The position numbers and the translations under genes were made by a program. From NCBI RefSeq assembly GCF_964204645.1, contig NC_134036.1:8484030-8548029 (forward strand): a stretch of 64,000 bases of DNA, in the 5' to 3' direction. This DNA is from Tubulanus polymorphus. Its lineage: Eukaryota > Animalia > Nemertea. Within the stretch, counting starts at the first letter, position 1. Every line of letters begins with the position of its first letter. Below, piece after piece: positions 28,413-64,000 of this stretch. The notes under the pieces were generated by a model. The model was not told the origin of the DNA, made no database searches, and was given only the letters and a program-made list of their open reading frames with translations.

Positions 28413-28688
28413 GATGTAGTATCCCGGGAATTGGCGATGATTACAGAGGAACTTTGAATCGAACGCCGTCCGGTAAAACGTGTCAGGCCTGGAATTCACA
28501 ATCACCCCACAATCATCAGTTTTACAATATGCTGGCGGACAAGGAAACCGCATCGAACTATTGCAGGAACCCTAGCAAATCACCGCTCGGAGCCTGGTGC
28601 TATACCACTGATCCGGCGACACGTTTTGAATATTGCTTCGTTTGTAATTGGGTAACAGGTAACAATCCCACAAAGTCAAATTCCCCCG
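28413..28688 (+). CDS. Gene B kringle domain 1 (alternative phase-1 donors after 28658 or 28688)
   Basis: CSIPGIGDDYRGTLNRTPSGKTCQAWNSQSPH...NYCRNP...AWCYTTDPATRFEYC, canonical kringle motifs; tttag| acceptor. Confidence 0.93.
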
Positions 28689-29629
28689 GTAAATACTCCC
28701 CTTTCAGAACACGATCGATTTCACTGAATTTAGCCTCACCATGTAGGATTAAATGTACTCCTGTTGTTATTGCGATTCTGCTGTCGTTTCATAGCTTATT
28801 CGGCTCGCTATCGAATGTAACAAAACAATGGTCACACGTGTCAATGAACTTATTCGAAGTAATGAGCGTATTGTGAAAGGTGTTTCTCAAGCATTTCTAA
28901 TTTCCCATTGTTTAAACGCCAAATTTGCATTCGAAATATTAAGCCGATCTATTCTACTTCCGACCTGGTCGTGTCAAAAGCAATTCAAGCGTTTAGTTTG
29001 TACTTGAAAATAAAATGAAATAGATTGATTGATGAAATACAAAACAAACAAACTCAACTAACTGACTACTGCTATGATACATCTTCATTATCTCATATTT
29101 TGAACCATATTTGTATTTCTCAGTCTAAGTTATTAGTATTTGATGAAAGAACATATTCTAGTTACTGACATTAGCTCGAACCTTGATTATTGTCTAAGTT
29201 GTACTATAACTATAACATGCCAATGGATGTGTACATGCGCCTCTCTCTGATTGGCTAGAATCCTCGCATTCGAAAGAAACTGACGACATCAGTGAACTAA
29301 CGGGGAAATTAGAATTGTATGTTTGACCACTGATTCTTCGTTTTTGAGTCCATGGTTTTGGCTCTGGTTTTATCGTGAGTTTGATTAACGTACATAGAGA
29401 ACAATGGTGGGGATTCGAATAACGTGCATCTTTTATTCATTCAGAAAAGAGTAGTATCATTACGTATATACATGTAGAAATTGATATAATAATTCTAATC
29501 AGGATTATCTCGTCACGCGGCACCAGTTTAAAGAGCCCTTATAAAGCCGCAAAGTACATTGAATGAAATTGACATAATGTCAACCTCTTACGGTCAACAA
29601 ATGAAACATATCGTACAATGATAACGAAT

Positions 29630-31967: not shown

Positions 31968-33730
31968 ATTAGACTTTGAAATAAGTTAGTTTTATTTCGA
32001 ACAACTTAAGAGCAGTCTCGATTCGATGTGCAACGAGCGACGCACCAAACACTCCGAATAGACAAGCCATAAAACTCAAAAAATAACATCGATAAACCCA
32101 AACCCAAACAATAAAAGGGAAGTTAAACATTAGATCAAAACGGCAATCGCATAGAAGCATTGTTGCGATCAAATGTAAAAGCCTTACGGGACTGAACCTC
32201 CCTAGTCGCTCAAATGTACACGTACAATGGTTTGTAAGCATCATCAACCGCGGTAACATAACCAGAGGGAAGGAAAAGCAACCCCTCAATAGTTACCCAA
32301 CGGTAACCACAATCGTCGAGAATAGCATCCACACCTTCAAAGCAGATCGTACCGTATCCCAAGGCAACTAAAAGGAGTATACTAAACCAACCTCCCAGCC
32401 AACATGACCGAAGCCTAACAACGGACACTAAGAGGCCCGCGGCTAGAGAATTGAAAACAGGACGCAATATGAACAACACATTGAAACTGATCGACGACCT
32501 AACTTTATTACCAGCGTAAACAATCGACAGGTTTCAGACGCCAAATCTTTTGCAATTTCATTTCCACCTCGGAAAACGGTAAAAGACAAATTGACCAACA
32601 AGCAAAACCCGTGGAATACAAGGGCAAACGCAACACGAAGCTGCGTAAACAATAAATATGAAAATGCTAAGATCTGAGTGCTCGCGTAAAACTGCAAAAT
32701 GTAAGGTATTTGTCACACGTCAAACGGAGCAAACTAAATCAGGCGTTGAGCGCGACTAAACTCCCCACGGAAACGAAAATGCGTTAAATAAAATCACCAA
32801 AACGGATCAGAAAACCGAAATAAGAGGCGAACTCCCTGACCGATAAATCTCACATAAATCCAACAACCCTGACCGCTCGAGCTTTCCCTGCCCTAAAAAT
32901 TCATTCATTAATTATCACTCTTTATTCGTAAACGTATCGATTCTTGCATTCTTTTCTCTCACACTCCGGGGCAGACCTCCATCCCGCATCCAGCAGGCAA
33001 AGAGACGCACAGTACTTGACGCACACAGCTTCATATCCACACCCAGTGGCTACAGCAAGTTTGTCCAAACACATTGGACGCCCGCACACAGTGGGCTTCA
33101 AATTCCCTCCAAACACATTGGATCGCAAAAAATTTGGTCCAAACACATTGGACGCCGGGGCACAGTGGGCTTTCAAAATCTATCAAAACACATTGGATCG
33201 CTCAGAAATTGGTCCAAACACATTGGACGCCCGCACAAAGTGGGCTTCAAAAATCTATCCAAACACATTGGATCGCTAAAAATTTGGTCCAAACACATTG
33301 GACGCCCGCGCACAGTGGGCTTTCAAAATCTATCAAAACACATTGGATCGCTCAGAAATTGGTCCAAACACATTGGACGCCCGCACAAAGTGGGCTTCAA
33401 AAATCTATCCAAACACATTGGATCGCTAGAAATTTGGTCCAAACACATTGGACGCCCGCGCACAGTGGGCTTCAAAAATCTATCCAAACACATTGGATCC
33501 GACCACACACAGTGGACTACCCCCTATTCCACACACAGTGGAATACCCCGGACGACTGACTCCAAACTGCACAAAAGAGGACACACAGATCAACAAAAGT
33601 ACATGGTCACAGCTCAAGGCCAAGTTGTGAACCAACACAACCGCACAAGCACGCCCGACAGCGAGGAAAACCAAAGCCAAACTGATTTCTTACCGTCTGT
33701 CCGCAGCGACACGTAGTGAGAATAGAAGTG
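31968..33730 (-). mobile_element. Degenerate insertion with strong strand bias and an internal tandem array; possibly a DIRS/Ngaro-derived non-autonomous element
   Basis: A/C-rich plus strand; minus strand ends aaataaaactaacttatttcaaagtct; weak DAYKPLYVYI* similarity to tyrosine-recombinase C-termini. Family and boundaries are tentative. Confidence 0.3.
33061..33500. repeat. 75-bp tandem repeat (45+30 subunits, 150-bp higher order), about 6 copies
   Basis: ccaaacacattggacgcc at 33139, 33214, 33289 and onward; the two variants alternate. Confidence 0.95.
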
Positions 33731-42957: not shown

Positions 42958-44274
42958 ATGGAACGAAACAATCGATGCTCTGGTGATAAACCAGAATCAG
43001 ACTTAGTATCAGATTTTGAATCTTTTATGAAAAGCTCAGTCGCTGACATCATGAAGCGCTTGAATGATATTCAACTTGAGCAGAAATAAATGACCGATAG
43101 TTTCGATTCTTTGAAAACCACAGTTCGTGTCCATGATACTGACATAAGTAGTATTAATGAAAAACTACAAAACCAATCAAAAACTATCGACGAGCTCGCT
43201 GACTCGGTTCAATACACCAGCAAATCCTACGACGACCTTCAAAATGAAAATCAAAAGTTGATCTCAGACTTGAACTTCACATCAGGGAAAGTAAACAGCC
43301 TCACCACAAGCCTTAAAGCCGCAAGGGCAGATATAAAAAAATTAGAAAGCCTCTGCATAGAGCTGCAGTGCCAAGTGAACTCAGGCCTCACTGCAAACTG
43401 CCCCGACCCAATAGACTGTGCAGAACTCTGCATTATCGTGAGCGACTTGAAGAAAGAATTCCAATCTGATCTCCAAAAAACATGCGAAGAAATGTTTGAC
43501 TATCTTGGCCATAAACAAGCAATCACAGCTCACAAGCAATTGCCGATTAGAAATGGTCAGAGAAATCCGCTTGTAAAGGTCGCGTTGAAAACAAAAGCCA
43601 TTAAAATCGATGTCTTGCGAAAGAAACATAATCTTAGAAAAAATCCTAAGTTCACTGATGTCTGGTTGAGATCAAGCCAATCACATGCGGAACGTCTCCA
43701 TGACATAAACTTCCGAAGAGTTCTAGATTTTATACCAGAAGCCAAGAAAGAACTTAAAATAGCGAGTAATGGGCGATTGATAAGTCGCTCCGTGCCACAT
43801 AGGCAACCGATAAACCGCAATGCGCCGGCTCAAAGAAACCGAACCCCAGCGACAGAGCCCGATGTAACCCCTGCCCGCGATGAAAGTAATGATGAAAAAA
43901 ACCGAACCCCAGCGACAGAGCCCGATGTAACCCCTTCCCGTGATGAAAGTACTTTTTCTGGTTTTACGTTTCGAGCTTCACCTACCCTGCCACCTCAAGT
44001 TGCTGTTAATAATGACGCAACATCTGGTGCGAACGAAACAACCAGCCGCAAGGAATACGCCACACTGACCAACTCTACGAAATCGCGCACCCGTAAAACC
44101 GCGCCTGCTGGAAATCGTAAACGGGATACCGTTAGACCTCCGGAAAAAAGAGCCAGAGATGCGTCTGAACCTGAACAATCATCAGTAAACGAAGCGCTCC
44201 GAGACGCCAGGTTCGTCTTGGATATGGACAGTGGATTACATCTATCCCAACCACTAGCAACAGCTCCAGAATAG
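42958..44274 (+). CDS. LINE ORF1 (coiled coil, RRM-like segment, disordered tail) with an in-frame TAA at 43087-43089
   Basis: ATG 42958 is in frame with the 43090-44274 ORF; heptad-rich N-terminal half; LVKVAL...VLRKKHNLR...VWL motif. Confidence 0.8.
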
Positions 44275-47200
44275 GATTGCGCCGAGCCAGGAGAAATTAG
44301 TATCCTGTGTCTGAATATTTGTGGTTTGAAATCTAGATCATATACTCTAGAGTTTGATAGTTTATGCAAGTCAGCTGATATTTTAGTTTTTTCTGAAACC
44401 AAACTTGATGATTCCGATGAATTGTGGGTAAAAGAGTATTTTAAAAGTGTCGGTTACGAAGTAGTCATGAATAACAGATCAAATCTAGCTATAAGGAAAT
44501 CTGGGGGAATCCTGGTTGCTTTTAAGCAAAGTCTAAACAGATATATTAAAACTATTCATAAATCAACCAATATCATTCAATGGATTGAAATTGATAAGAG
44601 ATTCCTAGGGTGGAAAAAACATTTGTTAATTGGAGGAGTATATATTCCCCCAGAAACTAGTAGATATGGAAATATTAACTTATTCGATGAACTCGACACT
44701 GACGTTATAAACCGAATGAGTTCTACCGATGCTTATTTTTGTCTATGTGGCGATTTCAATGCCTACACAAAGCAGTTATTAGACTATTTACCCCATGACG
44801 AAATACTCATGGAATTCCTAGGCCTAGACGAAGTTTTTGTGGAAGATCGTCATAACCTTGATGCACTAAAAATACAAGGTCTACTCAATAGGAAAAACAA
44901 AGACTCCTCTATCAATAATTGGGGTTATCGTTTGTTAGACTTTTGTAAAAATCACAACATGTTCATTGCAAATGGCAGATTAGGTAGGGATAAAGGAATC
45001 GGTGAGTACACGTGCATCAAAGGGGAAAATAACCATGTTATTGATTACTTTATTATGTCTCCCTATTTGTTGTCAAAATGCGTGAACTTCAATGTAAACG
45101 ACTATGACCAAATGATTTCAGACGTACACTGTGCTGTTACGTGTTCCTTCTCTATTTCACACACGAGAAGTCCATATTCAAATGTACAAAACATGCCTAA
45201 CATACCAGGTAAAATTAAATGGAACAGTGGTCGAAGCGATGTTTTTAGAGAGGCAATCAACCAAACCGAATTGAATAAAATAAATATCGAACTTCAAAAT
45301 GATATAATAGACAGCGCCTGTGCGAATAAGCGTATATGCGACATTTTAAATAAGGCGGCAGGGGCCACAATGGGCCGAAGCCGGGTTAACTTTGACAAAC
45401 CAAAAACTTTGTTACATGACTATAAAGTGAAACGAGACCGTAGAATTTATAGGAAAGCGAAAAGAAATTATAAAAGATATCGATCCGTCCAAAATAGAAC
45501 TAATCTGAATTCGGCGTATAAAAGGTATAAAACATCGATAAAGATATCAAAACAAAAGAAAGTTAAATTGCACAATGACCAAATAGGAAAGTTAGCAAAA
45601 GACGATCCAAAAGCTTTTTGGAAATATTTCCGAAAGGAAAAACCAAATGAATGTAAAGCGTCGCTAGATGATTTATTTGACCACTTTTCCGTCATTAACC
45701 AAAACCGTAGTGCAGAAAATGATAATCGTAATTTTTTCAATGTGAATGACTTCCTTCATGACCACAATGATGATGCACTTAATAGGCTAATCACTGAGGG
45801 AGAAATATCTAAATGTATAAAATGCCTCAAAAATAATAAAGCCCCTGGAAACGACGAAATTTTAAACGAATTCCTCAAAACTGCAGAAAATGAAATCATG
45901 CCTACCCCCGTTTTGTTGTTTAACAATATTTTGAAAACTGGCTGCATTCCGGAAGAGTGGGCTGTAGGTATTATCACTCCAATCTTTAAGAATAAGGGAG
46001 ACCCTTCCAATCCGGATAACTACAGAGGAATTACTCTATTAAGCTGTATGAGCAAATTGTTTACGAGCCTGATTAATAAACGTTTAGAGGAGTTTTTGAT
46101 GGATAACCAATTACTGAATGAAAATCAAGCTGGATTTCGAAAAAATCGTAGTATCATGGACCATATTTTCACATTGCATTCTCTTATAGATATTCTGACA
46201 GTAATAAGCGGAAGCTTTACTGTATATTTATTGATTACCAAAAAGCATTCGATACAATATGGAGAAAAGCACTGTGGCATGAATTAATTTTAACGGGAAT
46301 TACAGGAAATATCCTCCGAGTGATTCATAACATGTATCAACATATTAAATCTAAGGTCAAGGTAAACGATCGATTATCAGAAAGCATAGATAGTCAAATT
46401 GGGTTACGTCAAGGGGAAAATCTGTCACCAGTGCTTTTCTCCATATTTGTCAATGACCTCGAGTCTTTCTTATACGAGAAAGGGTGTCAAGGATTAGATT
46501 TCCAGCTGGATGATTTCTGGTTTAACATATTAATACTTTTATATGCCGACGATACTTTATTATTATCTGACAATGCTTCCAAACTGCAAAATATACTTGA
46601 CCATGTTGTGGATTACTGCCAAACATGGCAGTTAGTAATCAATGTCGAAAAAACCAAAGCCATAGTTTTCGAAAAAAGACGATCTAACAGACAGTCCATT
46701 TTCTATATCAGGGGGGTAGCCTTGGATACAGTATCTGACTTTAGATATTTGGGAGTACACTTTAATTATACTGGAAATTTCGCTAAATGCAAAAAAGATA
46801 TCTGTGACCAAGCAAAAAAAGCACTATTTTTTGTTCTTAAAAAAGTACAGCAATACTCCCTAACTATAGACATTGCATTTAAAATTTTTGATGCAATGGT
46901 GGGATCGATCCTTACCTTTGGTAGTGAAATATGGGGTTTCTCGAACTTAGATGCAATCGAGAAAATACACCTAATGTTCTGCAAATACTTATTGAAATTG
47001 AAACGTGCAACTCCAAATGCTATGGTTTATGGAGAATTAGGTCGTTTTCCTTTTGAAATACAAATAAAAGTCAGAATGGTTAAGTTTTGGGGACATCTGA
47101 TCACAGAGAGCAACACTCATTCTAGTAAAATGTATCGTATCCTAATAAATAATCATGTAAATGGTAAGACCAGTAAATGGATCACTTGTATTCAGTCTAT

Positions 47201-47712
47201 CTTAGAAAACTGTGGTCTAGGTTACATTTGGTACGAACAATCTTTCCCGAATATCCGGTATTTATCAGAAACTGTTAAATTATGTTTACAAGATCAATTC
47301 AAACAGAAATGGCACCAGACTATCGCAGCTTCAACAAAACTAGATACCTATAGAATTATTAAGCCGAATTGGGGGCGGGAAGTATGTTCATTAGCACTAC
47401 CATTTGACCTCAGGACAAATGTAATACGGTTTCGTTGCTCTAATCATAATCTACCGATTGAAACAAGAAGATATGAAAATATCCCCCCGAAATGAACGAC
47501 TTTGTACCAAATGTAACCTAGGGCAAATCGGCGACGAATACCATTTTATAATGGAGTGTACTTTTTTCGAAAGTTTAAGAAGTCGGTACATACCGCAACA
47601 AATAGTAACGTTTCCTAATATAAGAAAATTTATGAACCTTTCTACGTCAGAAAACCCAAACGTCCTAAGGAATCTTGCAGTTTTTATAAAAAAGGCACAT
47701 AGCCTCATCTAG
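44275..47712 (+). pseudogene. LINE ORF2 (endonuclease + reverse transcriptase + CCHC) with two frameshifts (~46200 and ~47485)
   Basis: ISILCLNICGL, SET, GDFNA, IDY and SDVH endonuclease motifs. After the 46200 shift it reads KRKLYCIFIDYQKAFD; there is an extra C in the run at ~47483-47488. Confidence 0.92.
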
Positions 47713-50811: not shown

Positions 50812-51322
50812 CGGACCAGTTTATGAATTGAGCGTGGGCCATAGAGCGCTATATCCGCCTGTGATCTCGACTTTCAATTTATTACGTAAGCTATTCGTGA
50901 ACAAAATGCGGCCGGCGCACAATAGAAACTTCGCTCTATGTATTCTTTCATAACCGCCGACAAAGAGGACCGATATTTCGCAAATTGGATTCGGGAGGTT
51001 TAAACCTCCCAAGGTCAAATCACTAAAATTGTGACCTTCGTGGAAATTATCTAAAAAGCCGATGGTAATCAAATTTAGCAGAACCTTTTACCCAAACGTT
51101 CAATGGTTTGAAAATCTTTCAATGGCATTCCTAAGTATTTGATGAAAGTTGAGAAATCATAAGATATTCATATAACCATGGACTCTAAAACCTAAATCAT
51201 ATAAGAGTCCCCGATATAAACAAAAAAACTTCGCATAACGAAGAAGCAAAAATTCGAATCTGATTCATCTGTTTGGAATTGATTCTTATGAAATGAAAAC
51301 AAATGCGTGAGCACTACTCATT
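50812..51322 (+). repeat. Dispersed repeat, inverted copy of 29630-30110
   Basis: Reverse-complement match with one extra internal segment. Confidence 0.85.
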
Positions 51323-52045
51323 CATCACCCGATACACATCCCCTTCGTCGATACTTTATCAAAGAAGGGTAAACCTTCATTTGATAGTCTATCGCCTCGT
51401 GTTATAGTATACTATATTATGGTAACCCTTCTTAGATACTCATTGCCAGAAGGGCGCGCGCGTTGGTCGCAAATTTATATTTTGGTACTTAGTTCGGCAT
51501 GACTGTCGGTTGTTATCGACAGATCCATCTTCTCAAGGACGAAGCCTATTTGGGCCATACAAAACTCCTCCGGCTGGCATAACAATCGCGTTTTACAAGG
51601 ATTTTAGGCCTGAATTCGATCAAGACGACAATCTGCATCCAATCCCCGTGTACACTGGTAAGTAAGGTGGCCTAATGTCTATTTCATTTTCATTTTCAAC
51701 CTGACTTGTGACATTTCGTGAGAAGCATACCGGGTGGCCTACTCAATGTCTATTTATTAATGGATGAGACCTGTTTTTCTGGGATATTTTGCTTACTTTT
51801 TGGGGTAAGGTACATACCTCATTTATGTCTTAACAGAATGCCAAAAATCGCGGACAACAACTGAATATCCGATATATTTCCAGTTCTGTACCAATTAGAT
51901 GGATTGGCAAAAAGACTCCTTAAGTCCAATTGAATGAGAGAGAAAATCCTCCATTTTGTGAAATTTCTTGAATTTGAACATTGTCACCATGACTGACGAA
52001 CATATTTTCCACATAGGGTGAATTTTAATGACTTAAAAATGAAAC

Positions 52046-53317
52046 TTTTTTAGCCCACTTGGGACTTTAGTCCCAGCGGGCTATTGCGTTCACTTTTCGT
52101 CCGTCCATCTGTTCGTCTGTCCGTAGACGGAATCCAGTTATTTTGGGAAGTTTTGAAGACGCTTCAAGGTAATGTCTTGATATTTGGTTTATACATGTAT
52201 CTACCCTAGACACATCTTCAGCCCAAAAACTGGCCCTATCAGAATCAACATGGCCGACTGGCAGCCATTGTTGTTTGCCAAAATCAGCACTTTTTACACA
52301 TTTTCGAAGTTTACGAGGGAAATTTTGAAGACGCTTTGATCAATTACCTTGATCTTTCGAATATATTTGAATCTACCAAGGGCCCATCAGCATAAGAAAA
52401 ATTGGGTCGATCGGACTCAAGATGGCCGTCCTATGACCTTTTTAGTGCCCAAAAATGTCAACTTTGGCCAGAATTCTAGGTCCTGTAGCTTCCTACTGGT
52501 TTGCCATTTCTCATTGCAATTTGTGATGGGTATTCTTTGTAAAGGGATGTTTTATACCCGAGATAGGTATTTTTGATCCGCCAATTATGACGCAATTGGC
52601 AGCCATCTTGGTGTCATTAGTACTCATTCGTAGGTGGGAAAAAGTTTTTCGACATTATATTGGTACCTAAGCATATTTTGTTACAACAATGAATTAGAAA
52701 GTTTTAGAGTATAATGTGTTCTATGATTGGGGTGAGTTTCAAGTTCATTGTTTTTTGTATATGGCCACCAGGGGGCGTTGAATAATACAATATCTTAGTA
52801 TTTCTATATTATATTTGTACCAATACATATTTTGTTACCGCAATCAATTGCAAAGTTGTAGCTCATGACATCATCTATGATTGTGGTGAGTTTTAAGGAA
52901 ATTAGTAATTCTACATAGTCACCAGGGGGCGTTGAATAGTAGAATAACCTGGTATTTCCTTATTATATTGGTACCTAGGCATATTTTGTTACCATGATCA
53001 ATTGCGAAGTTGTAGTTCATGACATGTTCTATGAATATGGTGAGTTACAAGGTTATTGGGTTTTGAATATGGTCACCAGGGGGCGTTGAATAGTAGATTA
53101 ACTTAGTATTTCCATATTAAATTAGTAACGTGGCATTTTTTGTTATCACAATCAATTACAAAATCGTAGCTGCTGACATGTTTTATGATTGTATTGGGTT
53201 TCAAGGTCATTGGTTTTTGTATATGGTCACCAGAGGGCGTTGAATATTGAAATTGTTAGATTGTTGAGCATTTGAAACCACTTCCCAAGTGGGCATGGTG
53301 TCCCTGGACCCCTAGTT
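52046..53317 (+). mobile_element. Non-autonomous Helentron-type element, longer copy with an internal 154-bp tandem array
   Basis: Same termini as 36251-36809; cacca(g)ggggcgttgaata-type motif at 52761, 52915, 53069 and 53223. A 3'-end fragment is also at ~26693-26747. Confidence 0.85.
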
Positions 53318-53927
53318 TCGATCACAATAAAAACTTCTTGGGTACTGCCACAGAGACCGTCTGCAGGCTGCTCGGATCCAAATGGGGGCATGCTCATCGA
53401 TTGCGTCCCCTAACCCCTAGTTGATATTTGATTGCATTGTAAAGATTTTGTAATACGACTAAATAGAGTAGATGTGTTAAACTTAAAAATCGTCTTTTAT
53501 ACATGAGTATCACATTTGTAATTACATTTATATTCGATTTCATTTGGACAGAATCAACAAGATGAATGGACCCTTCGATATCAAGTTTCTCACATAACCT
53601 ATGTGCGATTCATACAATCAAATAACAGGCAAGTTGTAATAGCCCCCAACAAATTACCGGTACCTGAATTATGGCACTGAAGGAACTTGGGGATTTGCTC
53701 AGTATTCCATTTCGTTCAGTAATCCATTTGGGCTCTCTTCCAATCACAATATATGTATTGATTTCAGCATTTCTAATATTTTCTTTTCCAGAAAGACTGA
53801 TGTAGACTAAACTATAATTTAATTGTTAAATTCACCAAAGCAAGTGAAGTTTCCTCAACAGCTCTACTCCGATCTCAATGAATGAAAAATGTAAATGAAT
53901 TGGTTTCTTGTACTATAATAAATTCTT

Positions 53928-56900
53928 TTATTCTTTCAATTCAATTGGTTGATGTTTTTCTACAATACTTTGTATCTTTTTATCATACGAGATCACCATA
54001 TCCATAACGGATGTCAGGTTTTCAATCGGCTCCCATGTGTTGTGTTTTGAAGAGAAGTCCAACCACTTAATTTTGTAATATTGTTGACCTCCTTTCGATT
54101 GATGACCAACAATTTTTTCCACCAAGAATATGTCTGGAATTAAAGATTGATATCAAATATACTACCACAGGCTACATATTACAATTGAAATTTTGCGCTT
54201 TAAGATGCTGTTTCTGCATAAATACATACCATCATTTGGTTTCTTTCTGGATTTATTTGCTAAAATGAAAAAAAATCAATCATTTTTTTTTTAAACGAAA
54301 CTACAGTGAACACCTCCCTTAGTGAACTCCTCTATTTAGTGAACGCCTCCCTTAGAGAACACTTTTACCCGGGAACCAAATTTTCCCTACTCATTTTCAA
54401 TTAAACAGAACCACCATTTAGTGAACTTTACCAAATGAGTATTTATAGTGAACAGTGGTCCCATCCCAAAATAACCTTGTCCTCACTAGCGTGTTGTACC
54501 CAGGTTTCAACGTACCTGGGTTCAATGAAAACCCGCGTTCACGGTGAGTAGCGTCTACACTTAACACAGTTTCGGTAGAACAACATCTTTAGTGCAAGTT
54601 CAAGGTCAATTGTGGCGCCTGAACTCTGCATTGAACGCGGGTTCACTGTCTAGACTAGCAAAAAATGCAGAGTTTTACGTGACAGGGGGTTTCAATGTGG
54701 AGTGTTCTTCTTCAAGAAGGGTTTCTAAAACCTGGGTTTTGCGGAAAAATATGTGCTACCTCCAATTAGTGAACACCTCTCTATAGTGAACAATTTCTTA
54801 GGAAGCGAAGTGTTCACTAGAGAGGTTATGCTGTATTCGATTGGTATTAACTGAATTGAAGGCTGCATACCTGATTTCTCCTTTTTCTTTGTGACAACTT
54901 CGGTTTTTCTTTTTGTCATAGGTTCTGTTGAAAAAAAGAAAGGATAATTCAGCCTAGCTATTCAATAATATCTCATTTTATTTATTTTCTAAATATAAAG
55001 AACAATACGTACCTCTGATGATCTCTGCACTATCTGAATCTACAATGAGAAACAAGATAATTTACCCCAATATTACCATAGCTTGTAAGTTTATAAGACA
55101 AAAAGACTTAGTTGTACCTTCAGTGGCTTCTGGAAACAGAAGTTCTTCAGTTGGTGACGCTGCTTCTCCGTGGCTCATAGTATCAACTAATAAGAAATAA
55201 TTCTAATATTATCCATCAGTTTCATTTCCATTTCATTTCCATTAAAACATATCAATTGATTTTGAAATAACAGACCAATGCATTACTTGGAAAAAAGCAT
55301 ATTGTATTTGTGATATAAGGAAAAAAGAATTGATACCATGTTTCTTATTTCTGAGCTTAAAAATTGACGCAGGTGGCCATGTATCTACTCTGTATATTTA
55401 CTTTTTTTGAAACCATGATCAAGCTAACAATAACAGACCTGGCAGTTACAGAAATAAACTGATTAGAAAATGTATTGCCGAGGACAAACAAGGTATCAAT
55501 TTTTTACCTTATAAAACACAATAATGCTGATCTGGCTGCTTTGAAATATTTCTTTAAACGTGCATACCCTACCATTATTTATTTTCCTTTTCTTGATGCC
55601 AGTTTTGATTACTGAAAGAGAACAATTTTTTAATTGATTTTGTGCAATTATATTTTCATCAAAGACTGCATAGCTTAGTGTTAAAAACGTACCTGATTTC
55701 CCTGTTTTCTTTGTGAGGACTTCGGCTTTTCTTTTTGCCATATTAGGTTCTGTTGAAAAAAAGAAAGAATAATTCAGCCTAGCGATACAACAATATCTTT
55801 TTTGCTTAAACGTAAGAATAACATAAGAATACGTACCTCTGATGATCTCTGTAGCATCTGAATCTACAATGAGAAACAAGATAATTTACCCCAATATTAC
55901 CATAGCTTGTAAGTTTATAAGACAAAAAGACTTAGTTGTACCTTCAGTGGCTTCTGGAAACTGAAGTTCTTCAGTTGGTGACGCTGCTTCTTCGTGGCTC
56001 ATAGTATCAACTAATAAGAAATAATTCTAATGTTATCCTTCCATATTCCATTAAGACATATACCAGTACGAGTACATTGTATTTCAATTCATTAAGCCCA
56101 CACAAAGAAATACCCTAGTTCTTCAAGGTCAAATGCCACCCGCATCATAAAAAAAGTAAAAATCGAAATTAATTAAATTAAAATCGAAAATTCAAATGCG
56201 CTAACCCGCATTGGCAAACCATCAATCTGAATCGTCTTTTTTATCATAAAAATTAAATCCTGCTCGCCCGCACCGCTGTATTTGTTATTTACTTACTTAC
56301 CGCATCTCTTATATAAGTCTTTGGTTTCGAGCTTTTTATTTCAACTCTTTTTCAAAGGAGCTATGAAAATATAATTTGCTCACCAGCGTCACTTTCCAGA
56401 AAAAACCTGAGAAACTACGGTATTTCTTTGTGTGGCCTAATAATGACATTCAATATATCAACATCAAGATAAATGTTGATATATTATGTAATAGTGTGTC
56501 TAACTTAGTGTGTTAAATATCTATTACCGGTAAGTTGAAACAGTGTACCTTCGAAGTATATTTTATCTTCCTTTTTCAAAAGTGCTTTCAGCGAGTTTTT
56601 TGCATAAGATGATGGTCTTTTCAAAATTATTCCAGTTGGCAAATTAAATGCCCTGACTTGACCAGCATCAACCGCTTTGTAGCTGCATCTCGTCCCGGAG
56701 ATACCCTTTATTGCTGAAGCTATATAATGGCGCATATGAAATGATTACGATTGTCAAATGCTGAATTTTTCGACTATTTGAATGTATAATCAAATCAAGT
56801 AGCTAAAATATATGCTTACTGTATTTACGATTGAACATATCTGTGACTTTCGATCGCAGTACGTTGACATCTTCTAATTGATTGTCATCATCTGAATGTA

Positions 56901-58110
56901 GCAACAAACGTATAGAAACTGAGACTGCCTGAATTATCTTAGTTAATGATAGTGAAAGTGTGTATGTTTGAATTATCTTTACCTGGCTGATAAAGTGACT
57001 TCAGACTTTGCTGAACCTCTCTCTGTTTTTCAAACCACTTTGTTGGAATTGGTGATCCACATATAAACATTCTATTCCCATCCTTAGTAATAGCAATAGC
57101 AACAACATCCAACTTTTCTGTTGTCGAAGTAAATTTATTTACCTGAAGTATAATTATGTTATTTAGATGACTGCAAATAACATAAACGTTAATGGTTAAA
57201 TGAAACGGCCTACCTTTTTTTCTAGTTCATGCACCAGAAATTCAATGTTATTTTCTTTATTTTCTGGGCCGATAGGCTGGCTGTGGCTTGCAGCCCTCTG
57301 TGCGTATGAAGCCATTGCTTCCTCTGTTTGGTCATTCCAATTTCCCTGGCCTAAAATGATATACAAATTACACACACCTCACTTTAAACAGGCTCAGCAA
57401 CTACATAGAGGTTGACTAAAATCAACATGTATCTAGCTTACATTTTCCTTTTTTTTATCAGAGAGATAAACATCGTACGGTCTGCATGATCGAATGCGCT
57501 GCTTCTTACTCAGATTTTCATAGTTGTAAATCCCAGCTTTCTTTCGACATTGTACCTTGTGGTTCTCTATCCATTTCTTAAACAGAATAAACTAAAACTT
57601 TTAAAATACAGTTTATCAATTTATTATTTTAGTAAAAGTGCTTCATCACAAAGTCTGGAGAAAACACCGTAGGCCCTAGATCATAAGAAAAAGTTATATA
57701 GGCCTACCTTAACTGATTTCTCTGGCATGCCTGTAGCAACACTGGCTTCTCGAACCATTCCTTTGGTAAATTCATTTCCACAATGAGTCATCCCTTTCTC
57801 ATAATAGGACACCAAAGTAGACTGTCTGAATTCAAATTGAAACTAAAGCAGTTAACGACTGTTAAATGTAAGTAGCTTAAAAGATCTTTCATAGTCAAAC
57901 TCGCCAAAGTTCATCAGAGAGGTTGTCATAAGTTATCTCTGATCTTGGAACGACATTAGGCTAAGTCAACAACGTAATGATAGTGCATGTATCAGTTAAT
58001 TATAAGAACTAGGTCTGAATGGTTTGATAGTAGAGACCTGCCCAAGTGCATGCTTACCTTTCCTTGGTGTTTAATAATGGCCCATGGGTATTTTCAAATT
58101 CTTTGTCCAT
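53928..58110 (-). CDS. Gene C: 472-aa protein with homeodomain-like, HMG-box-like, GTF2I (TFII-I) repeat, microexon linker and C-terminal chromodomain
   Basis: 16 coding exons, all GT-AG and phase-consistent: 58110-58058, 57825-57708, 57576-57442, 57345-57214, 57142-56983, 56891-56820, 56719-56549, 56010-55942, 55863-55837, 55749-55693, 55611-55573, 55186-55118, 55039-55013, 54924-54871, 54259-54230, 54133-53928 (1419 nt). Probable UTR exon ends at 58796. Confidence 0.8.
54304..54833. mobile_element. Tc1/mariner-pogo-like MITE in a gene C intron
   Basis: TA|cagtgaacacctcccttagtgaac ... gttcactagagaggttatgctg|TA; repeated tagtgaac subterminal motifs. Confidence 0.7.
56096..56437. mobile_element. 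Harbinger-like MITE in a gene C intron
   Basis: TAA|gcccacacaaagaaatacc ... ggtatttctttgtgtggcc|TAA. Confidence 0.75.
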
Positions 58111-59649: not shown

Positions 59650-61343
59650 TCAAAACAAATGAGAAGAATAGCGACAAGTACGTGTCCAAATATGTGCTTT
59701 CTTCTCCTCGTGGAATATGCGAGTAAATTTCATAGGACACTCACATAGATAACAATTATGATTGCTGCCAACCCAACGGTATATCCAGATATCATGGTTC
59801 GGACAATGGCAATTTGTGGTGGTACTCGAACTACCTAATTTTTTGTCAATACTTTTTTTAACCGCTTCGTTATAGGCACATATCGTATCTAGTTTATGCA
59901 TTTGTCGAGCATGCTGAAGGAGATCTTTAAATTTTTCACCATACTTTTTGCAGTAAGGCAAAATACATCGATCAGCAATAACAACTTTTTCAGAAGTGTG
60001 ACGCTTTTTATGGTCAGTCAGGTTGCCTCTAGACATAAATCTTAATCCACAAATATTGCAAGCATATTGTCCTTTTGGCACATGTCTTTTAACATGAACG
60101 TTCAAATTGCTCTTATCGGTAAAGCTTTTACCGCATATCTCGCATGAAAATTTCAGTTCTTTGCAATGTATTCTTGAATGACGATTAAAATTTGATTTAT
60201 TGCCAAAAATTCTGCCGCACACCGAACATTCATATCCACTGTCTACTTTTTTACATAATACTGTAGCTGTATCGGGCGCAATAACTGATGACGAGTCCTG
60301 GTTCTTTTCGCTAACGTCACTTTTTAGAACGGAAACAACACGACGTCTATTACTTTTACGCCTGGACAAAGTTGTCGTAACATCAACACGTTTTACAGAT
60401 ACATTTTCTTCGATGTCCTGTTGCTGCTTGAGCTTTTTTAATTGGTCGACATGAATATTCCACTGTTCTTCGAAACTAATCGAATCATACTTCCATGCGA
60501 GGAAATGAAGTCCAATATTTAGGGAGGGCTTAAGTCCAATTGCTTTTTTTTCCATAAACAATGGTATAATCGATTTTGCATGTTCTTTAACTTCCTCCAT
60601 TGGCCATGGCCCAATTGGCAATGCTCCACCATACTTTAACCGCAGAGCTTCCACGCGTCTAATCGTATCAATTTCGCCAATAATTGGGCAGGAGGGAAGA
60701 AATTCTTGAAATTCATGAGTATAAAAGCTGAAAAGAAAGATATTCAATTAGAAGATAGTTTAGTACAGGTAAGATAAGAATTTTGGTTGATAAGAGGATT
60801 TATTGTCCATACTTACAAATAACCATAGCCATTTCCGTGTATTTCAACGACCAGGTCCCCACTTCCATAGGGGCATGTTGGTGGAATATCATGTAGTCCG
60901 CAGATCTGTTTTTGGGCCTGTGTATTTTCCGCTACATTTATCACACCCATACATCTGGGAGGAAACTTACGAACATACGCAAATCCCACTCGTATTCTCT
61001 CTGACTCTGTGCGAAGTAAATAAAGAGGTTTCTTACTTATCATTGACATCAGATCAGCTAATACCAAGTCATACAGCTATGCCTTGACAGTATATAAATT
61101 TAAACAATTACGGTATGTACCTTTTACAGCAGCTCCAGTAAGCTTGTTGGCCGGGTACTGGTTGTTGAGTCGGAGCCCATCTGTTTCAACGGGCGTACCG
61201 AGGATCGGGGTTTCACTGCCGACTTTCTTCTGCCGGCCTTGTTCTTTGTCACTATCGTCTTCGACTTCATCACTTACATTGAATGGTTCTATTCCACTAA
61301 TATCGCTACTTGCATCCAGATCCACGCCTAGACATTCAGCCAT
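59650..61343 (-). CDS. Gene D: 496-aa protein with acidic N-terminus, divergent PWWP-like segment, three canonical plus one atypical C2H2 fingers and a Cys/His-rich tail
   Basis: Exons 61343-61121, 61006-60817 and 60727-59650 are phase-consistent (1491 nt). Fingers: YECSVCGRIF...HSRIH, FSCEICGKSF...HVKRH, YACNICGLRF...HKKRH. The PWWP call is tentative. Confidence 0.82.
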
Positions 61344-61623: not shown

Positions 61624-64000
61624 TGGTCGTTCTTATTTGAACGACGATATCAGAAACGCGCAACTGCTAATATATAACCATATTCGCAATTCACCAGAAA
61701 CATACTGAGACAAGAACGACCAAGCAGGCAGAAAACATTAAACAATCATCAATATCCACATTTTTCGACTATATTTAGCGTGAAATAGAAGTTTCGATCA
61801 ATTTCTCATTGTTGGTCGTTCTTGTTTGAACGACGATATCAGAAACGCGCAACTGCTAATATATAACCACATTCGCAATTCACCAGAAACATACTGAGAC
61901 AAGAACGACCAAGCAGACAGAAAAAATTAAACAATCATCAATATCCACATTTTTCGACTATATTTAGCGTGAAATAGAAGTTTCGATCAATTTCTCATTG
62001 TTGGTCGTTCTTGTTTGAACGACGATATCAGAAACGCGCAACTGCTAATATATAACCATATTCGCAATTCACCAGAAACATACTGAGACAAGAACGACCA
62101 AGCAGGCAGAAAACATTAAACAATCATCAATATCCACATTTTTCGACTATATTTAGCGTGAAATAGAAGTTTCGATCAATTTCTCATTGTTGGTCGTTCT
62201 TGTTTGAACGACGATATCAGAAACGCGCAACTGCTAATATATAACCATATTCGCAATTCACCAGAAACATACTGAGACAAGAACGACCAAGCAGGCAGAA
62301 AACATTAAACAATCATCAATATCCACATTTTTCGACTATATTTAGCGTGAAATAGAAGTTTCGTTCAATTTCTCATTGTTGGTCGTTCTTGTTTGAACGA
62401 CGATATCAGAAACGCGCAACTGCTAATATATAACCATATTCGCAATTCACCAGAAACATACTGAGACAAGAACGACCAAGCAGGCAGAAAACATTAAACA
62501 ATCATCAATATCCACATTTTTCGACTATATTTAGCGTGAAATAGAAGTTTCGATCAATTTCTCATTGTTGGTCGTTCTTGTTTGAACGACGATATCAGAA
62601 ACGCGCAACTGCTAATATATAACCATATTCGCAATTCACCAGAAACATACTGAGACAAGAACGACCAAGCAGGCAGAAAACATTAAACAATCATCAATAT
62701 CCACATTTTTCGACTATATTTAGCGTGAAATAGAAGTTTCGATCAATTTCTCATTGTTGGTCGTTCTTGTTTGAACGACGATATCAGAAACGCGCAACTG
62801 CTAATATATAACCACATTCGCAATTCACCAGAAACATACTGAGACAAGAACGACCAAGCAGGCAGAAAACATTAAACAATCATCAATATCCACATTTTTC
62901 GACTATATTTAGCGTGAAATAGAAGTTTCGATCAATTTCTCATTGTTGGTCGTTCTTGTTTGAACGACGATATCAGAAACGCGCAACTGCTAATATATAA
63001 CCACATTCGCAATTCACCAGAAACATACTGAGACAAGAACGACCAAGCAGACAGAAAACATTAAACAATCATCAATATCCACATTTTTCGACTATATTTA
63101 GCGTGAAATAGAAGTTTCGATCAATTTCTCATTGTTGGTCGTTCTTGTTTGAACGACGATATCAGAAACGCGCAACTGCTAATATATAACCATATTCGCA
63201 ATTCACCAGAAACATACTGAGACAAGAACGACCAAGCAGGCAGAAAACATTAAACAATCATCAATATCCACATTTTTCGACTATATTTAGCGTGAAATAG
63301 AAGTTTCGATCAATTTCTCATTGTTGGTCGTTCTTGTTTGAACGACGATATCAGAAACGCGCAACTGCTAATATATAACCATATTCGCAATTCACCAGAA
63401 ACATACTGAGACAAGAACGACCAAGCAGGCAGAAAACATTAAACAATCATCAATATCCACATTTTTCGACTATATTTAGCGTGAAATAGAAGTTTCGATC
63501 AATTTCTCATTGTTGGTCGTTCTTGTTTGAACGACGATATCAGAAACGCGCAACTGCTAATATATAACCATATTCGCAATTCACCAGAAACATACTGAGA
63601 CAAGAACGACCAAGCAGGCAGAAAACATTAAACAATCATCAATATCCACATTTTTCGACTATATTTAGCGTGAAATAGAAGTTTCGATCAATTTCTCATT
63701 GTTGGTCGTTCTTGTTTGAACGACGATATCAGAAACGCGCAACTGCTAATATATAACCATATTCGCAATTCACCAGAAACATACTGAGACAAGAACGACC
63801 AAGCAGGCAGAAAACATTAAACAATCATCAATATCCACATTTTTCGACTATATTTAGCGTGAAATAGAAGTTTCGATCAATTTCTCATTGCTGGTCGTTC
63901 TTATTTGAACGACGATATCAGAAACGCGCAACTGCTAATATATAACCATATTCGCAATTCACCAGAAACATACTGAGACAAGAACGACCAAGCAGGCAGA
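61624..64000. repeat. Highly homogeneous 189-bp tandem array, at least 12.5 copies, running off the window end
   Basis: atttctcatt at 61801, 61990, 62179 and 62368 (period 189); only scattered substitutions. Confidence 0.98.

What the first reader, a model, noticed from the sequence alone, without database searches (positions are those of the whole stretch)
53928..58110. Unusual four-module protein: homeodomain-like + HMG-like + GTF2I repeat + chromodomain
The ORF track shows only fragments; splicing 16 exons gives one open frame. TLVSYYEKGM...VREASVATGMPEKSVKKWIENHKVQCRKK looks like a divergent homeodomain (WIxN helix 3). RSCRPYDVYLSD...NWNDQTEEAMASYAQRA looks like a shortened HMG box. An I-repeat follows, then a chromodomain whose three cage positions are aromatic (F in IFLVEKI, W and F in IKWLDF). 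I do not recognise this combination as any named gene.
Basis: partly seen in the sequence, partly recalled or inferred. Interest (0 to 1): 0.8.

Follow-up and report, generated by a model that had tools for sequence, protein, structure and literature searches.

The report
Transposon gene joining TFII-I repeat to chromodomain
This is a real, spliced gene carried as a passenger by a 25-kb cut-and-paste jumping gene of a ribbon worm; its protein joins a DNA-binding unit otherwise known from vertebrate TFII-I factors to an HP1-type reader of histone marks, so the jumping gene appears to carry its own link to silent chromatin.

Summary
The 16-exon, 472-codon model holds arithmetically: every junction is AG/GT and every exon is open in its phase. 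Seven junctions match RefSeq model XP_074643312.1 of Tubulanus polymorphus, predicted on a sister copy.

Two of the four modules are confirmed:
- The chromodomain scores Pfam E 5e-15 and has a complete F/W/F cage against human HP1-alpha.
- There is one GTF2I-type I-repeat, at 41 bits once both of its exons are read together.

The "homeodomain" is supported only as a three-helix HTH-like module that a crinoid I-repeat protein also has. No homeodomain profile or fold match was found. The HMG box is not supported.

The gene exists only as six 97-100% identical copies. Each lies about 10-12 kb downstream of a KDZ transposase gene (about 44 kb in the most diverged copy). In the copies whose ends were read, the whole unit sits inside a ~25-kb element with ~50-bp inverted ends. 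7-bp target duplications flank two of the three copies read on both sides.

In this window's copy the open frame needs a weaker acceptor, because an A-run in exon 3 is one base shorter than in four sister copies.

No RNA data could be laid. The scan has already found this element on other copies (s1-526820, s1-506626, s1-526949).

The parts
53928..58110 (-). Whole coding span of the passenger gene: 16 exons, 472 codons in this copy.
   Evidence: all junctions AG/GT and phases consistent; seven junctions match RefSeq model P0001.
57708..57825 (-). Exon 2: helices 1-2 and the start of helix 3 of the N-terminal HTH-like module. Helix 3 (KWIENHK) continues in exon 3, 57442-57576.
   Evidence: Smith-Waterman against the crinoid P0003 N-terminus gives shuffle P 0.002, collinear with exon 3. 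A WIDNHK exon lies upstream of an I-repeat exon in metagenome contig L028. No Pfam hit.
57449..57456 (-). A-run in exon 3: 8 A here and in the 97% copy, 9 A in four sister copies and in the read contigs. It decides which of two acceptors 5 nt apart (57350 or 57345) keeps the frame.
   Evidence: (table 4, place 57448).
56983..57345 (-). Exons 4 and 5: unassigned region. There is a weak collinear likeness to the conserved N-terminal segment of vertebrate TFII-I/GTF2IRD1.
   Evidence: hhalign P 0.013 (exon 5) and 0.17 (exon 4). HMMER shuffle test: 75 of 2000 shuffles reach the real score. No HMG_box hit.
56549..56891 (-). Exons 6 and 7: a single GTF2I-type I-repeat, split by one intron.
   Evidence: Exon 7 alone: Pfam PF02946, 25.9 bits. 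Both exons together in P0001: 41.3 bits, profile positions 1-73 of 75. PDB: GTF2IRD1 repeats 2d99 and 2dzr are the only hits.
54230..56010 (-). Linker of eight phase 1-1 mini-exons (acidic, then K/R-rich NLS-like). A 350-bp block holding three of them occurs twice, 824 bp apart (54868-55217 and 55690-56041).
   Evidence: The one-block form is seen in the C2 copy and in a read contig that joins 55031 to 55856.
53928..54133 (-). Exon 16: HP1/Polycomb-class chromodomain with an F/W/F aromatic cage, a C-terminal helix and the stop codon. AATAAA overlaps the stop.
   Evidence: Pfam PF00385, 55.6 bits, E 4.8e-15. PDB CBX5, Rhino, MPP8 and CBX2 at E 1e-8 to 3e-7, with the cage residues aligned. Sequence read.
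51326..51380 (.). Right terminal inverted repeat of the KDZ element. The element runs from here past the window end to C12:8561189, about 25.8 kb. The 7-bp target duplication ATGAATG lies just outside, at 51319-51325.
59650..60747 (-). Neighbouring element gene: 365-aa single-exon C2H2 zinc-finger ORF, same strand, 1.5 kb upstream.
   Evidence: Present in all full copies.
61624..64000 (.). 189-bp satellite array inside the element. It continues beyond the window. The KDZ transposase exons follow at C12:8554438-8555619 (L013 6409-7590, minus strand).

Best explanation
The span is an accessory (passenger) gene of a recently active, roughly 25-kb KDZ-superfamily DNA transposon of the ribbon worm Tubulanus polymorphus.

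Shown:
- The gene is split into 16 short exons.
- It encodes one protein with an N-terminal three-helix HTH-like module, an unassigned segment, one TFII-I-type I-repeat, a charged linker with K/R-rich stretches, and a C-terminal HP1-class chromodomain with a complete aromatic cage.
- It occurs only inside this element, always downstream of the KDZ transposase gene, a 189-bp satellite and a C2H2 zinc-finger gene.

Inferred:
- The protein is an adaptor. Its HTH/I-repeat end binds DNA, most plausibly sequences of the element itself such as its ends or the satellite.
- Its chromodomain binds methylated H3 tails (H3K9me or H3K27me).
- It therefore ties the element or its transposition complex to silent chromatin. 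I favour steering new insertions into heterochromatin, as the chromodomains of chromoviral integrases do. The alternative is setting the element's own chromatin state.

This window's copy may be a slightly damaged member, because its open frame depends on a secondary acceptor.
For: - Gene model: with the independent RefSeq model P0001 on a sister copy.
- Domains: Chromo 55.6 bits and GTF2I 41.3 bits on one protein. The cage residues align to CBX5 Y20/W41/F44; the residue numbers are from my knowledge and the alignment is.
- Mobile context: six copies at 97-100% identity on five contigs. Identity extends over about 25 kb. The inverted ends are about 50 bp, with 7-bp target duplications ATGAATG (C12) and ACATATC (C6).
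- Transposase: KDZ PF18758 lies 9.5-12.3 kb upstream on the same strand in five copies, and about 44 kb away in the sixth.
- Exclusivity: I-repeat, HTH exon and this chromodomain are found nowhere else in the genome.
- Selection: variable sites are fewer in exons than in introns, 18/1219 against 54/2100, Fisher p 0.036.
- Wider occurrence: the HTH-like module plus I-repeat recurs in a crinoid protein and in a metagenome contig.
- Literature: giant KDZ elements with accessory genes are documented (PMC12477816, PMC12730594).
Against: - No RNA evidence. The three runs that hold the stretch carry its introns and so behave as DNA. The one possible RNA run holds nothing.
- The RefSeq model may be ab initio.
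- This copy needs the weaker of two acceptors. Two other copies carry frame-breaking changes, so the gene is not kept intact in every copy.
- Copies are too alike for a dN/dS test. In the 97% copy, 11 of 16 exon changes alter the protein, which looks neutral.
- DNA binding, histone binding and any role in transposition are untested.
- One of three copies checked on both sides has no target duplication.
Confidence: 0.6

Rival explanations
1. The gene is a functionless hitch-hiker. A host or foreign gene fragment mosaic was picked up by the transposon and is now decaying. It is copied only because it lies between the ends, and the protein does nothing for the element or the host.
For: - The frame in this copy depends on a secondary acceptor.
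- The C2 copy has a 7-nt deletion in exon 5.
- The 97% copy has another 1-nt change in exon 3 and mostly amino-acid-changing differences.
- No RNA evidence.
Against: - Three young copies keep all 16 exons and splice sites intact.
- Exons vary less than introns.
- The chromodomain keeps every cage residue.
- No donor gene exists in the genome: the best chromodomain paralogue is 49% identical and there is no other I-repeat.
- The HTH plus I-repeat arrangement is conserved in another phylum.
Confidence: 0.2
2. There are two separate transcription units. One gene has the HTH-like module and the I-repeat and ends after exon 7. A separate small chromodomain gene lies downstream. The mini-exon linker is a reading artefact.
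For: - The linker exons are tiny (27-69 nt).
- 2.4 kb of repeat-rich sequence, including a SINE-like insert, separates exon 7 from exon 16.
- Another element of this genome is reported to carry a stand-alone chromodomain gene (note s1-496673, not checked here).
Against: - Exon 7 ends in phase 1 with no stop. Every linker exon is open in phase 1-1 with AG/GT, and the chromodomain exon also starts in phase 1 with no Met of its own before the domain.
- The RefSeq model joins I-repeat and chromodomain in one protein through these same exons.
- The duplicated exon block keeps the frame.
Confidence: 0.08
3. It is a host gene family spread by segmental duplication, not by transposition.
For: Several copies lie on the same contigs: two on C4, and the one on C2 lies near other KDZ hits.
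Against: - Identity stops at the same bases in every copy, at inverted ends.
- Flanks are unrelated.
- 7-bp direct duplications flank two copies.
- A KDZ transposase gene is inside.
Confidence: 0.02

Closest known systems
Vertebrate TFII-I family (GTF2I, GTF2IRD1, GTF2IRD2)
   Same: It has an I-repeat that passes the Pfam GTF2I threshold over nearly the whole profile. The only PDB hits of exon 7 are GTF2IRD1 repeats. There is a weak collinear likeness to the conserved N-terminal segment that precedes the first repeat.
   Different: It has one repeat instead of 2-6. It adds an HTH-like N-terminus and a chromodomain. It is an invertebrate gene carried by a transposon, and identity to the vertebrate repeats is only about 35%. 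GTF2IRD2 joins I-repeats to a domesticated hAT transposase (PMC10641963). Here the repeat protein is a separate gene inside a live KDZ element.
HP1 / CBX / Rhino / MPP8 chromodomain proteins
   Same: The chromodomain is of the same class, E about 1e-8, with all three cage residues and the NTWEP motif.
   Different: There is no chromoshadow domain or other HP1 parts. The chromodomain is C-terminal and joined to DNA-binding modules. The closest genomic paralogue is only 49% identical.
Chromodomains of chromoviral (Ty3/gypsy) integrases
   Same: A mobile element carries its own chromodomain. In those elements it directs integration to heterochromatin (Gao et al. 2008, cited in PMC12477816). That is the mechanism proposed here.
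   Different: There the domain is fused to the integrase of a retrotransposon. Here it sits on a separate accessory protein of a cut-and-paste DNA transposon. The genome's retrotransposon chromodomains are only 39-46% identical.
Giant KDZ transposons with accessory genes (fungal TET/JBP carriers, Ectocarpus and Chlamydomonas KDZ)
   Same: It is a giant KDZ element of more than 20 kb with nested repeats and extra genes beside the transposase (PMC12477816, PMC12730594).
   Different: The host is an animal. The accessory genes are a C2H2 protein and an I-repeat/chromodomain protein rather than a dioxygenase. The target duplication is 7 bp, where Zisupton gives 8 bp (PMC12730594).
PIF/Harbinger second ORF (Myb/SANT DNA-binding protein)
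   Same: It is a DNA transposon that encodes, beside its transposase, a separate DNA-binding protein (general knowledge; Nuwa families in PMC12730594).
   Different: The superfamily and the domains differ. A requirement for transposition is shown for Harbinger and is only conjectured here.
Anneissia japonica XP_033122800.1 'zinc finger protein 665-like' (P0003) and Capitella teleta ELT88798.1 (P0002)
   Same: These are invertebrate I-repeat proteins. P0003 shares the N-terminal HTH-like module. Both are linked to C2H2 arrays: fused in the crinoid, adjacent in Capitella and in Tubulanus.
   Different: They have no chromodomain and several I-repeats. No KDZ similarity was found within 10 kb.

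Membership tests
Chromodomain (Pfam PF00385, HP1/Polycomb class) | Profile match above the curated threshold | tested here: met
   55.6 bits against a cut-off of 25.1, E 4.8e-15, profile positions 2-52 of 53. 52.9 bits in P0001.
Chromodomain (Pfam PF00385, HP1/Polycomb class) | Three aromatic cage residues at the methyl-lysine pocket | tested here: met
   The alignment to CBX5 (8uxq) and Rhino (4quc) puts F, W and F of this protein on the Y/W/F cage positions.
Chromodomain (Pfam PF00385, HP1/Polycomb class) | Binding of methylated H3K9 or H3K27 peptides | not testable with these tools
   Needs a peptide array or ITC.
GTF2I-like repeat (Pfam PF02946) | Profile match above the curated threshold over the whole repeat | tested here: met
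   Exon 7 alone gives 25.9 bits, below the cut-off of 27. With exon 6, in the RefSeq sister-copy protein, it gives 41.3 bits over profile positions 1-73 of 75.
TFII-I family proper (GTF2I/GTF2IRD1) | Several I-repeats behind a conserved N-terminal segment with a leucine zipper | tested here: not met
   Only one repeat. N-terminal likeness is weak: hhalign P 0.013 and 0.17, shuffle P 0.038.
Homeodomain (PF00046) | Profile match | tested here: not met
   No homeodomain or other HTH family listed even at E up to 10 (HMMER's filters drop most matches above about 0.1) for exon 2, exon 3 or the crinoid homologue residues 1-95. No PDB sequence hit. The domain is split between two exons that I could not join.
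Homeodomain (PF00046) | Three-helix fold superposing on homeodomains | tested here: inconclusive
   The model of crinoid P0003:1-95 has helices 4-25, 33-44 and 48-60 at pLDDT about 70-80. The best Foldseek E is 1.1, with homeodomains only at E about 3. VIA-align tops out at Z 6.5 on TetR, Rex and DtxR HTH domains, within the tool's stated noise range for helical models.
HMG box (PF00505) | Profile match and a roughly 70-residue three-helix L-shape | tested here: not met
   No hit for exon 3 or exon 4 listed even at E up to 10. The proposed stretch is about 35 residues.
KDZ-superfamily DNA transposon (accessory gene of) | KDZ transposase domain in the same repeated unit | tested here: met
   PF18758 at 40.5 bits in an L013 ORF. 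The same two-exon hit pattern lies upstream on the same strand in every copy.
KDZ-superfamily DNA transposon (accessory gene of) | Terminal inverted repeats and target-site duplications bounding the unit | tested here: met
   About 50-bp imperfect inverted ends starting CACCCGATACAC. 7-bp duplications at the C12 and C6 copies, none at C8. Zisupton gives 8 bp (PMC12730594), so the length differs.
KDZ-superfamily DNA transposon (accessory gene of) | The gene is found only inside the element | tested here: met
   DNA, HTH exon, I-repeat profile and chromodomain exon each find only the six element copies at high identity.

The most novel reading that the evidence does not exclude
The I-repeat, so far treated as a vertebrate invention of the TFII-I family, is an old module that travels on invertebrate DNA transposons. 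Here it is caught in its mobile state, coupled to an HP1-type chromodomain, as a transposon-encoded factor that steers a cut-and-paste element into methyl-H3 chromatin. That would be a DNA-transposon counterpart of chromoviral integrase targeting, and a plausible source from which the vertebrate TFII-I genes were domesticated.
Probability: 0.15. Interest if true: 0.8.

Novelty: new variant of a known kind. Interest (0 to 1): 0.55.

Why it matters
Chromodomain-guided integration is established for LTR retrotransposons, but I found no report of it for a cut-and-paste DNA transposon. An accessory protein that couples sequence-specific DNA binding to histone-mark reading would be a compact, testable model of how a DNA transposon chooses or shapes chromatin.

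It also places the I-repeat, known from the Williams-syndrome genes GTF2I and GTF2IRD1, in invertebrates and on a mobile element. That bears on where the vertebrate family came from.

For annotation, these six loci, of which the protein searches here found only one as a database protein (an 'uncharacterized protein', from the C2 copy), are transposon genes, not host chromatin regulators.

Tried and rejected
- **RNA evidence.** The look-up of sequencing runs gave three runs whose contigs contain the introns, so they behave as DNA, and one possible RNA run from 2015 with nothing on the stretch. The junctions could not be tested.
- **Word search.** The I-repeat exon gave a blank, because of the length window. 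P0001 found only itself.
- **ESM Atlas** with P0001: no usable hit.
- **The look-up of encoding contigs** for P0001: not on record.
- **BLASTP** of single exons against P0003 and P0002: nothing. Smith-Waterman with shuffles was needed.
- **AlphaFold of P0001 without an alignment:** pLDDT 34, unusable.
- **Fold search of the crinoid N-terminus:** only generic HTH matches.
- **hhalign shuffle script:** timed out and was replaced by HMMER shuffles.
- **tblastn of all element ORF pieces** against the crinoid and Capitella loci: only generic C2H2 and I-repeat matches, no KDZ.
- **Bacterial promoter/terminator scan:** irrelevant for an animal gene, and below the shuffle mean.
- **Literature searches** for GTF2I with chromodomain, KDZ or invertebrate: nothing relevant.
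- **Readings rejected:** HMG box and a true homeodomain (no profile support); host gene family (inverted ends and target duplications).
- All searches used single exons by reference or database proteins.
Full report
**What is in the sequence**

The finding lies on the minus strand of an AT-rich animal genome.
- Every exon is preceded by AG and followed by GT.
- The phases chain (0, 2, 0, 0, 0, then 1 for exons 6 to 16).
- No exon has a stop in its phase.
- The sum is 1419 nt, which is 472 codons plus the stop at 53928-53930.
- An AATAAA overlaps the stop codon.

Everything below used single exons by reference or proteins returned by the databases.

**Independent support for the splicing**

An exhaustive HMMER search of 1.84 billion representatives with exon 7 (56 aa) gave only 20 hits.

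The best hit, P0001, is RefSeq XP_074643312.1, 'uncharacterized protein LOC141900353 [Tubulanus polymorphus]'. It lies on a 31,900,244-bp contig, which is contig C2 of this assembly. That names the organism as a palaeonemertean ribbon worm.

P0001 starts at a Met inside exon 5. It then contains the peptides of exons 6, 7, 8, 14, 15 and 16, each separated by exactly one split-codon residue, plus a shortened exon 13. I-repeat and chromodomain are in one predicted protein.

I could not get RNA evidence.
- The only runs that hold the stretch carry its introns and so behave as DNA.
- The one possible RNA run holds nothing (4801 letters laid).

**The four modules**

1. *Chromodomain: confirmed.*
   - Exon 16 scores 55.6 bits (E 4.8e-15) on Pfam Chromo.
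   - It matches solved HP1-alpha, Rhino, MPP8 and CBX2 chromodomains at E 1e-8 to 3e-7.
   - In those alignments its F, W and F sit on the three cage positions.
2. *I-repeat: confirmed.*
   - Exon 7 alone is just under the Pfam cut-off, at 25.9 against 27 bits.
   - With exon 6, in P0001, it scores 41.3 bits over positions 1-73 of the 75-position profile.
   - Its only PDB hits are GTF2IRD1 repeats.
3. *'Homeodomain-like': only loosely supported.*
   - No Pfam family and no PDB sequence matches exon 2, exon 3, or the first 95 residues of the crinoid protein P0003.
   - Exon 2 does align to the P0003 N-terminus (shuffle P 0.002), and exon 3 continues collinearly at the WI motif.
   - A metagenome contig has a WIDNHK exon upstream of an I-repeat exon.
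   - An AlphaFold model of P0003:1-95 gives three helices at pLDDT 70-80.
   - Foldseek finds nothing below E 1.
   - VIA-align gives only generic HTH domains at Z about 6, inside the tool's stated noise range for helical models.
   - I call it a conserved three-helix, HTH-like module of unproven family.
4. *HMG box: not supported.*
   - There is no profile hit, and the stretch is about 35 residues.
   - Exons 4-5 instead align, weakly but collinearly, to the conserved N-terminal segment of vertebrate TFII-I and GTF2IRD1: hhalign P 0.013 and 0.17, and 75 of 2000 shuffles reach the HMMER score.
   - This is a lead, not a result.

**The linker**

Exons 8 to 15 are eight phase 1-1 mini-exons coding acidic and then K/R-rich stretches.
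- A 350-bp block with three of them occurs twice, 824 bp apart.
- The C2 copy and one read contig have the one-block form.
- Because every exon is phase 1-1, any of them can be skipped in frame.
- Exon 11 has no outside support.

**A caveat specific to this copy**

The A-run at 57449-57456 in exon 3 has 8 A here and in the most diverged copy. It has 9 A in four sister copies and in the read contigs.
- With 9 A, the frame is kept by the first acceptor (ttttag, 57350).
- With 8 A, the frame is kept only by the second AG, 5 nt on (57345).

So this copy either uses a weaker acceptor or is frameshifted after exon 3.

Two other copies are damaged.
- The C2 copy has a 7-nt deletion in exon 5. This explains the N-terminally short RefSeq protein.
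- The 97% copy has a further 1-nt change in exon 3.

**Context: a transposon passenger**

The 4.2-kb gene has six copies on five contigs at 97-100% identity. Similarity extends on both sides and stops at the same bases in every copy.
- The left end is at C12:8561189 and the right end at window 51326. This copy is therefore about 25.8 kb, and the C8 copy is similar in size.
- The ends are imperfect inverted repeats of about 50 bp starting CACCCGATACAC.
- 7-bp direct duplications flank the C12 copy (ATGAATG) and the C6 copy (ACATATC). The C8 copy has none.

Inside the element, in gene orientation, the order is:
- a multi-exon KDZ transposase gene (PF18758);
- a 189-bp satellite of variable length;
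- a 365-aa C2H2 zinc-finger ORF;
- this gene;
- a nested 1.27-kb high-copy repeat.

The KDZ hits lie 9.5-12.3 kb upstream on the same strand in five copies, and about 44 kb away in the sixth.

The HTH exon, the I-repeat profile and this chromodomain occur nowhere else in the 268-Mb genome. The nearest other chromodomain is 49% identical.

Variable sites among the copies are fewer in exons than in introns: 18/1219 against 54/2100, p 0.036. That is a modest sign of constraint.

I took the KDZ lead from earlier notes of this scan (s1-526820, s1-506626) and tested it as above. The scan has thus already found this element on other copies.

**Likely mechanism**

What is shown is the anatomy: one protein with DNA-binding-type modules at one end and a methyl-lysine reader at the other, encoded only by a young, mobile KDZ element.

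The rest is inferred. I propose an adaptor that binds DNA through the HTH-like module and the I-repeat, and binds H3K9me- or H3K27me-marked nucleosomes through the chromodomain.
- The reading I favour is target choice. The transposition complex would be tethered to silent chromatin, as chromoviral integrase chromodomains do (Gao et al. 2008, cited in PMC12477816).
- The alternative is control of the element's own chromatin, with the 189-bp satellite or the ends as binding platform.

Rivals:
- a decaying hitch-hiker (0.2);
- two separate genes (0.08);
- segmental duplication of a host gene (0.02, contradicted by the ends).

**Comparison with what is known**

- Giant KDZ elements that carry accessory genes are known in fungi, brown algae and Chlamydomonas (PMC12730594, PMC12477816).
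- Chromatin-related passengers such as TET/JBP or SET genes are also known (PMC12730594).
- Full-text searches found no report that joins an I-repeat with a chromodomain, or puts an I-repeat on a transposon.
- The 'GTF2IRD2-like' misannotations in non-mammals concern the hAT part, not the I-repeat (PMC10641963).
- Invertebrate I-repeats are sparse. They occur in Capitella, in the crinoid Anneissia and in a dozen short environmental ORFs with the same exon ends.
- In Tubulanus, Capitella and Anneissia the I-repeat gene is adjacent to, or fused with, a C2H2 array. No KDZ similarity lies within 10 kb in the latter two.

**Verdict**

This is a real and unusual architecture. Two modules are confirmed, one is loosely supported and one is rejected. 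The decisive context is that it is a transposon accessory gene. I class it as a new variant of a known kind and score interest 0.55.

Noticed in passing
window 61624-64000 and on to about C12:8549983 (L013): A 189-bp satellite lies inside the KDZ element: at least 12.6 units at 99% identity, each unit with a 13-nt inverted repeat at its ends. The array length differs between element copies, which accounts for the 9.5-12.3 kb spacing between the KDZ gene and this gene.
   Followed up: partly
window 52045-53318 and L013 2500-3825: The same roughly 1.27-kb repeat family (at least 40 genomic copies at 92-97%) is nested twice in the element. This C12 copy lacks a further 1.29-kb segment that the C8 copy has near the right end. 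I did not check whether the repeat is a non-autonomous relative of the element.
   Followed up: partly
window 54473-54748 (intron 14): A SINE-like dispersed repeat sits in the intron, 73-88% identical to about 25 of the listed matches in the genome. A 16-bp tandem repeat lies beside it at 54305-54362.
   Followed up: no
window 59650-60747 (-): A 365-aa single-exon C2H2 zinc-finger ORF lies 1.5 kb upstream on the same strand, in every full element copy. I-repeat genes are also adjacent to, or fused with, C2H2 arrays in Capitella (L027 3364-4710) and Anneissia (P0003).
   Followed up: partly
window 43090-47495 (+): A non-LTR retrotransposon lies just outside the element: a coiled-coil ORF1, then Exo_endo_phos and RVT_1 split over two ORFs.
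   Followed up: partly
window 28454-28876 (+): An ORF with a Kringle domain (61.8 bits), probably an exon of a host gene.
   Followed up: no
window 32944-33716 (+): Overlapping long ORFs made of a tandem peptide repeat, in a GC-richer and strongly skewed stretch.
   Followed up: no
L028 (ENA metagenome contig, 2820 bp): An unnamed eukaryote in an environmental assembly has a WIDNHK exon (722-763), an I-repeat first-half exon (2009-2044) and an I-repeat second-half exon (2306-2452) in the same order as here.
   Followed up: partly
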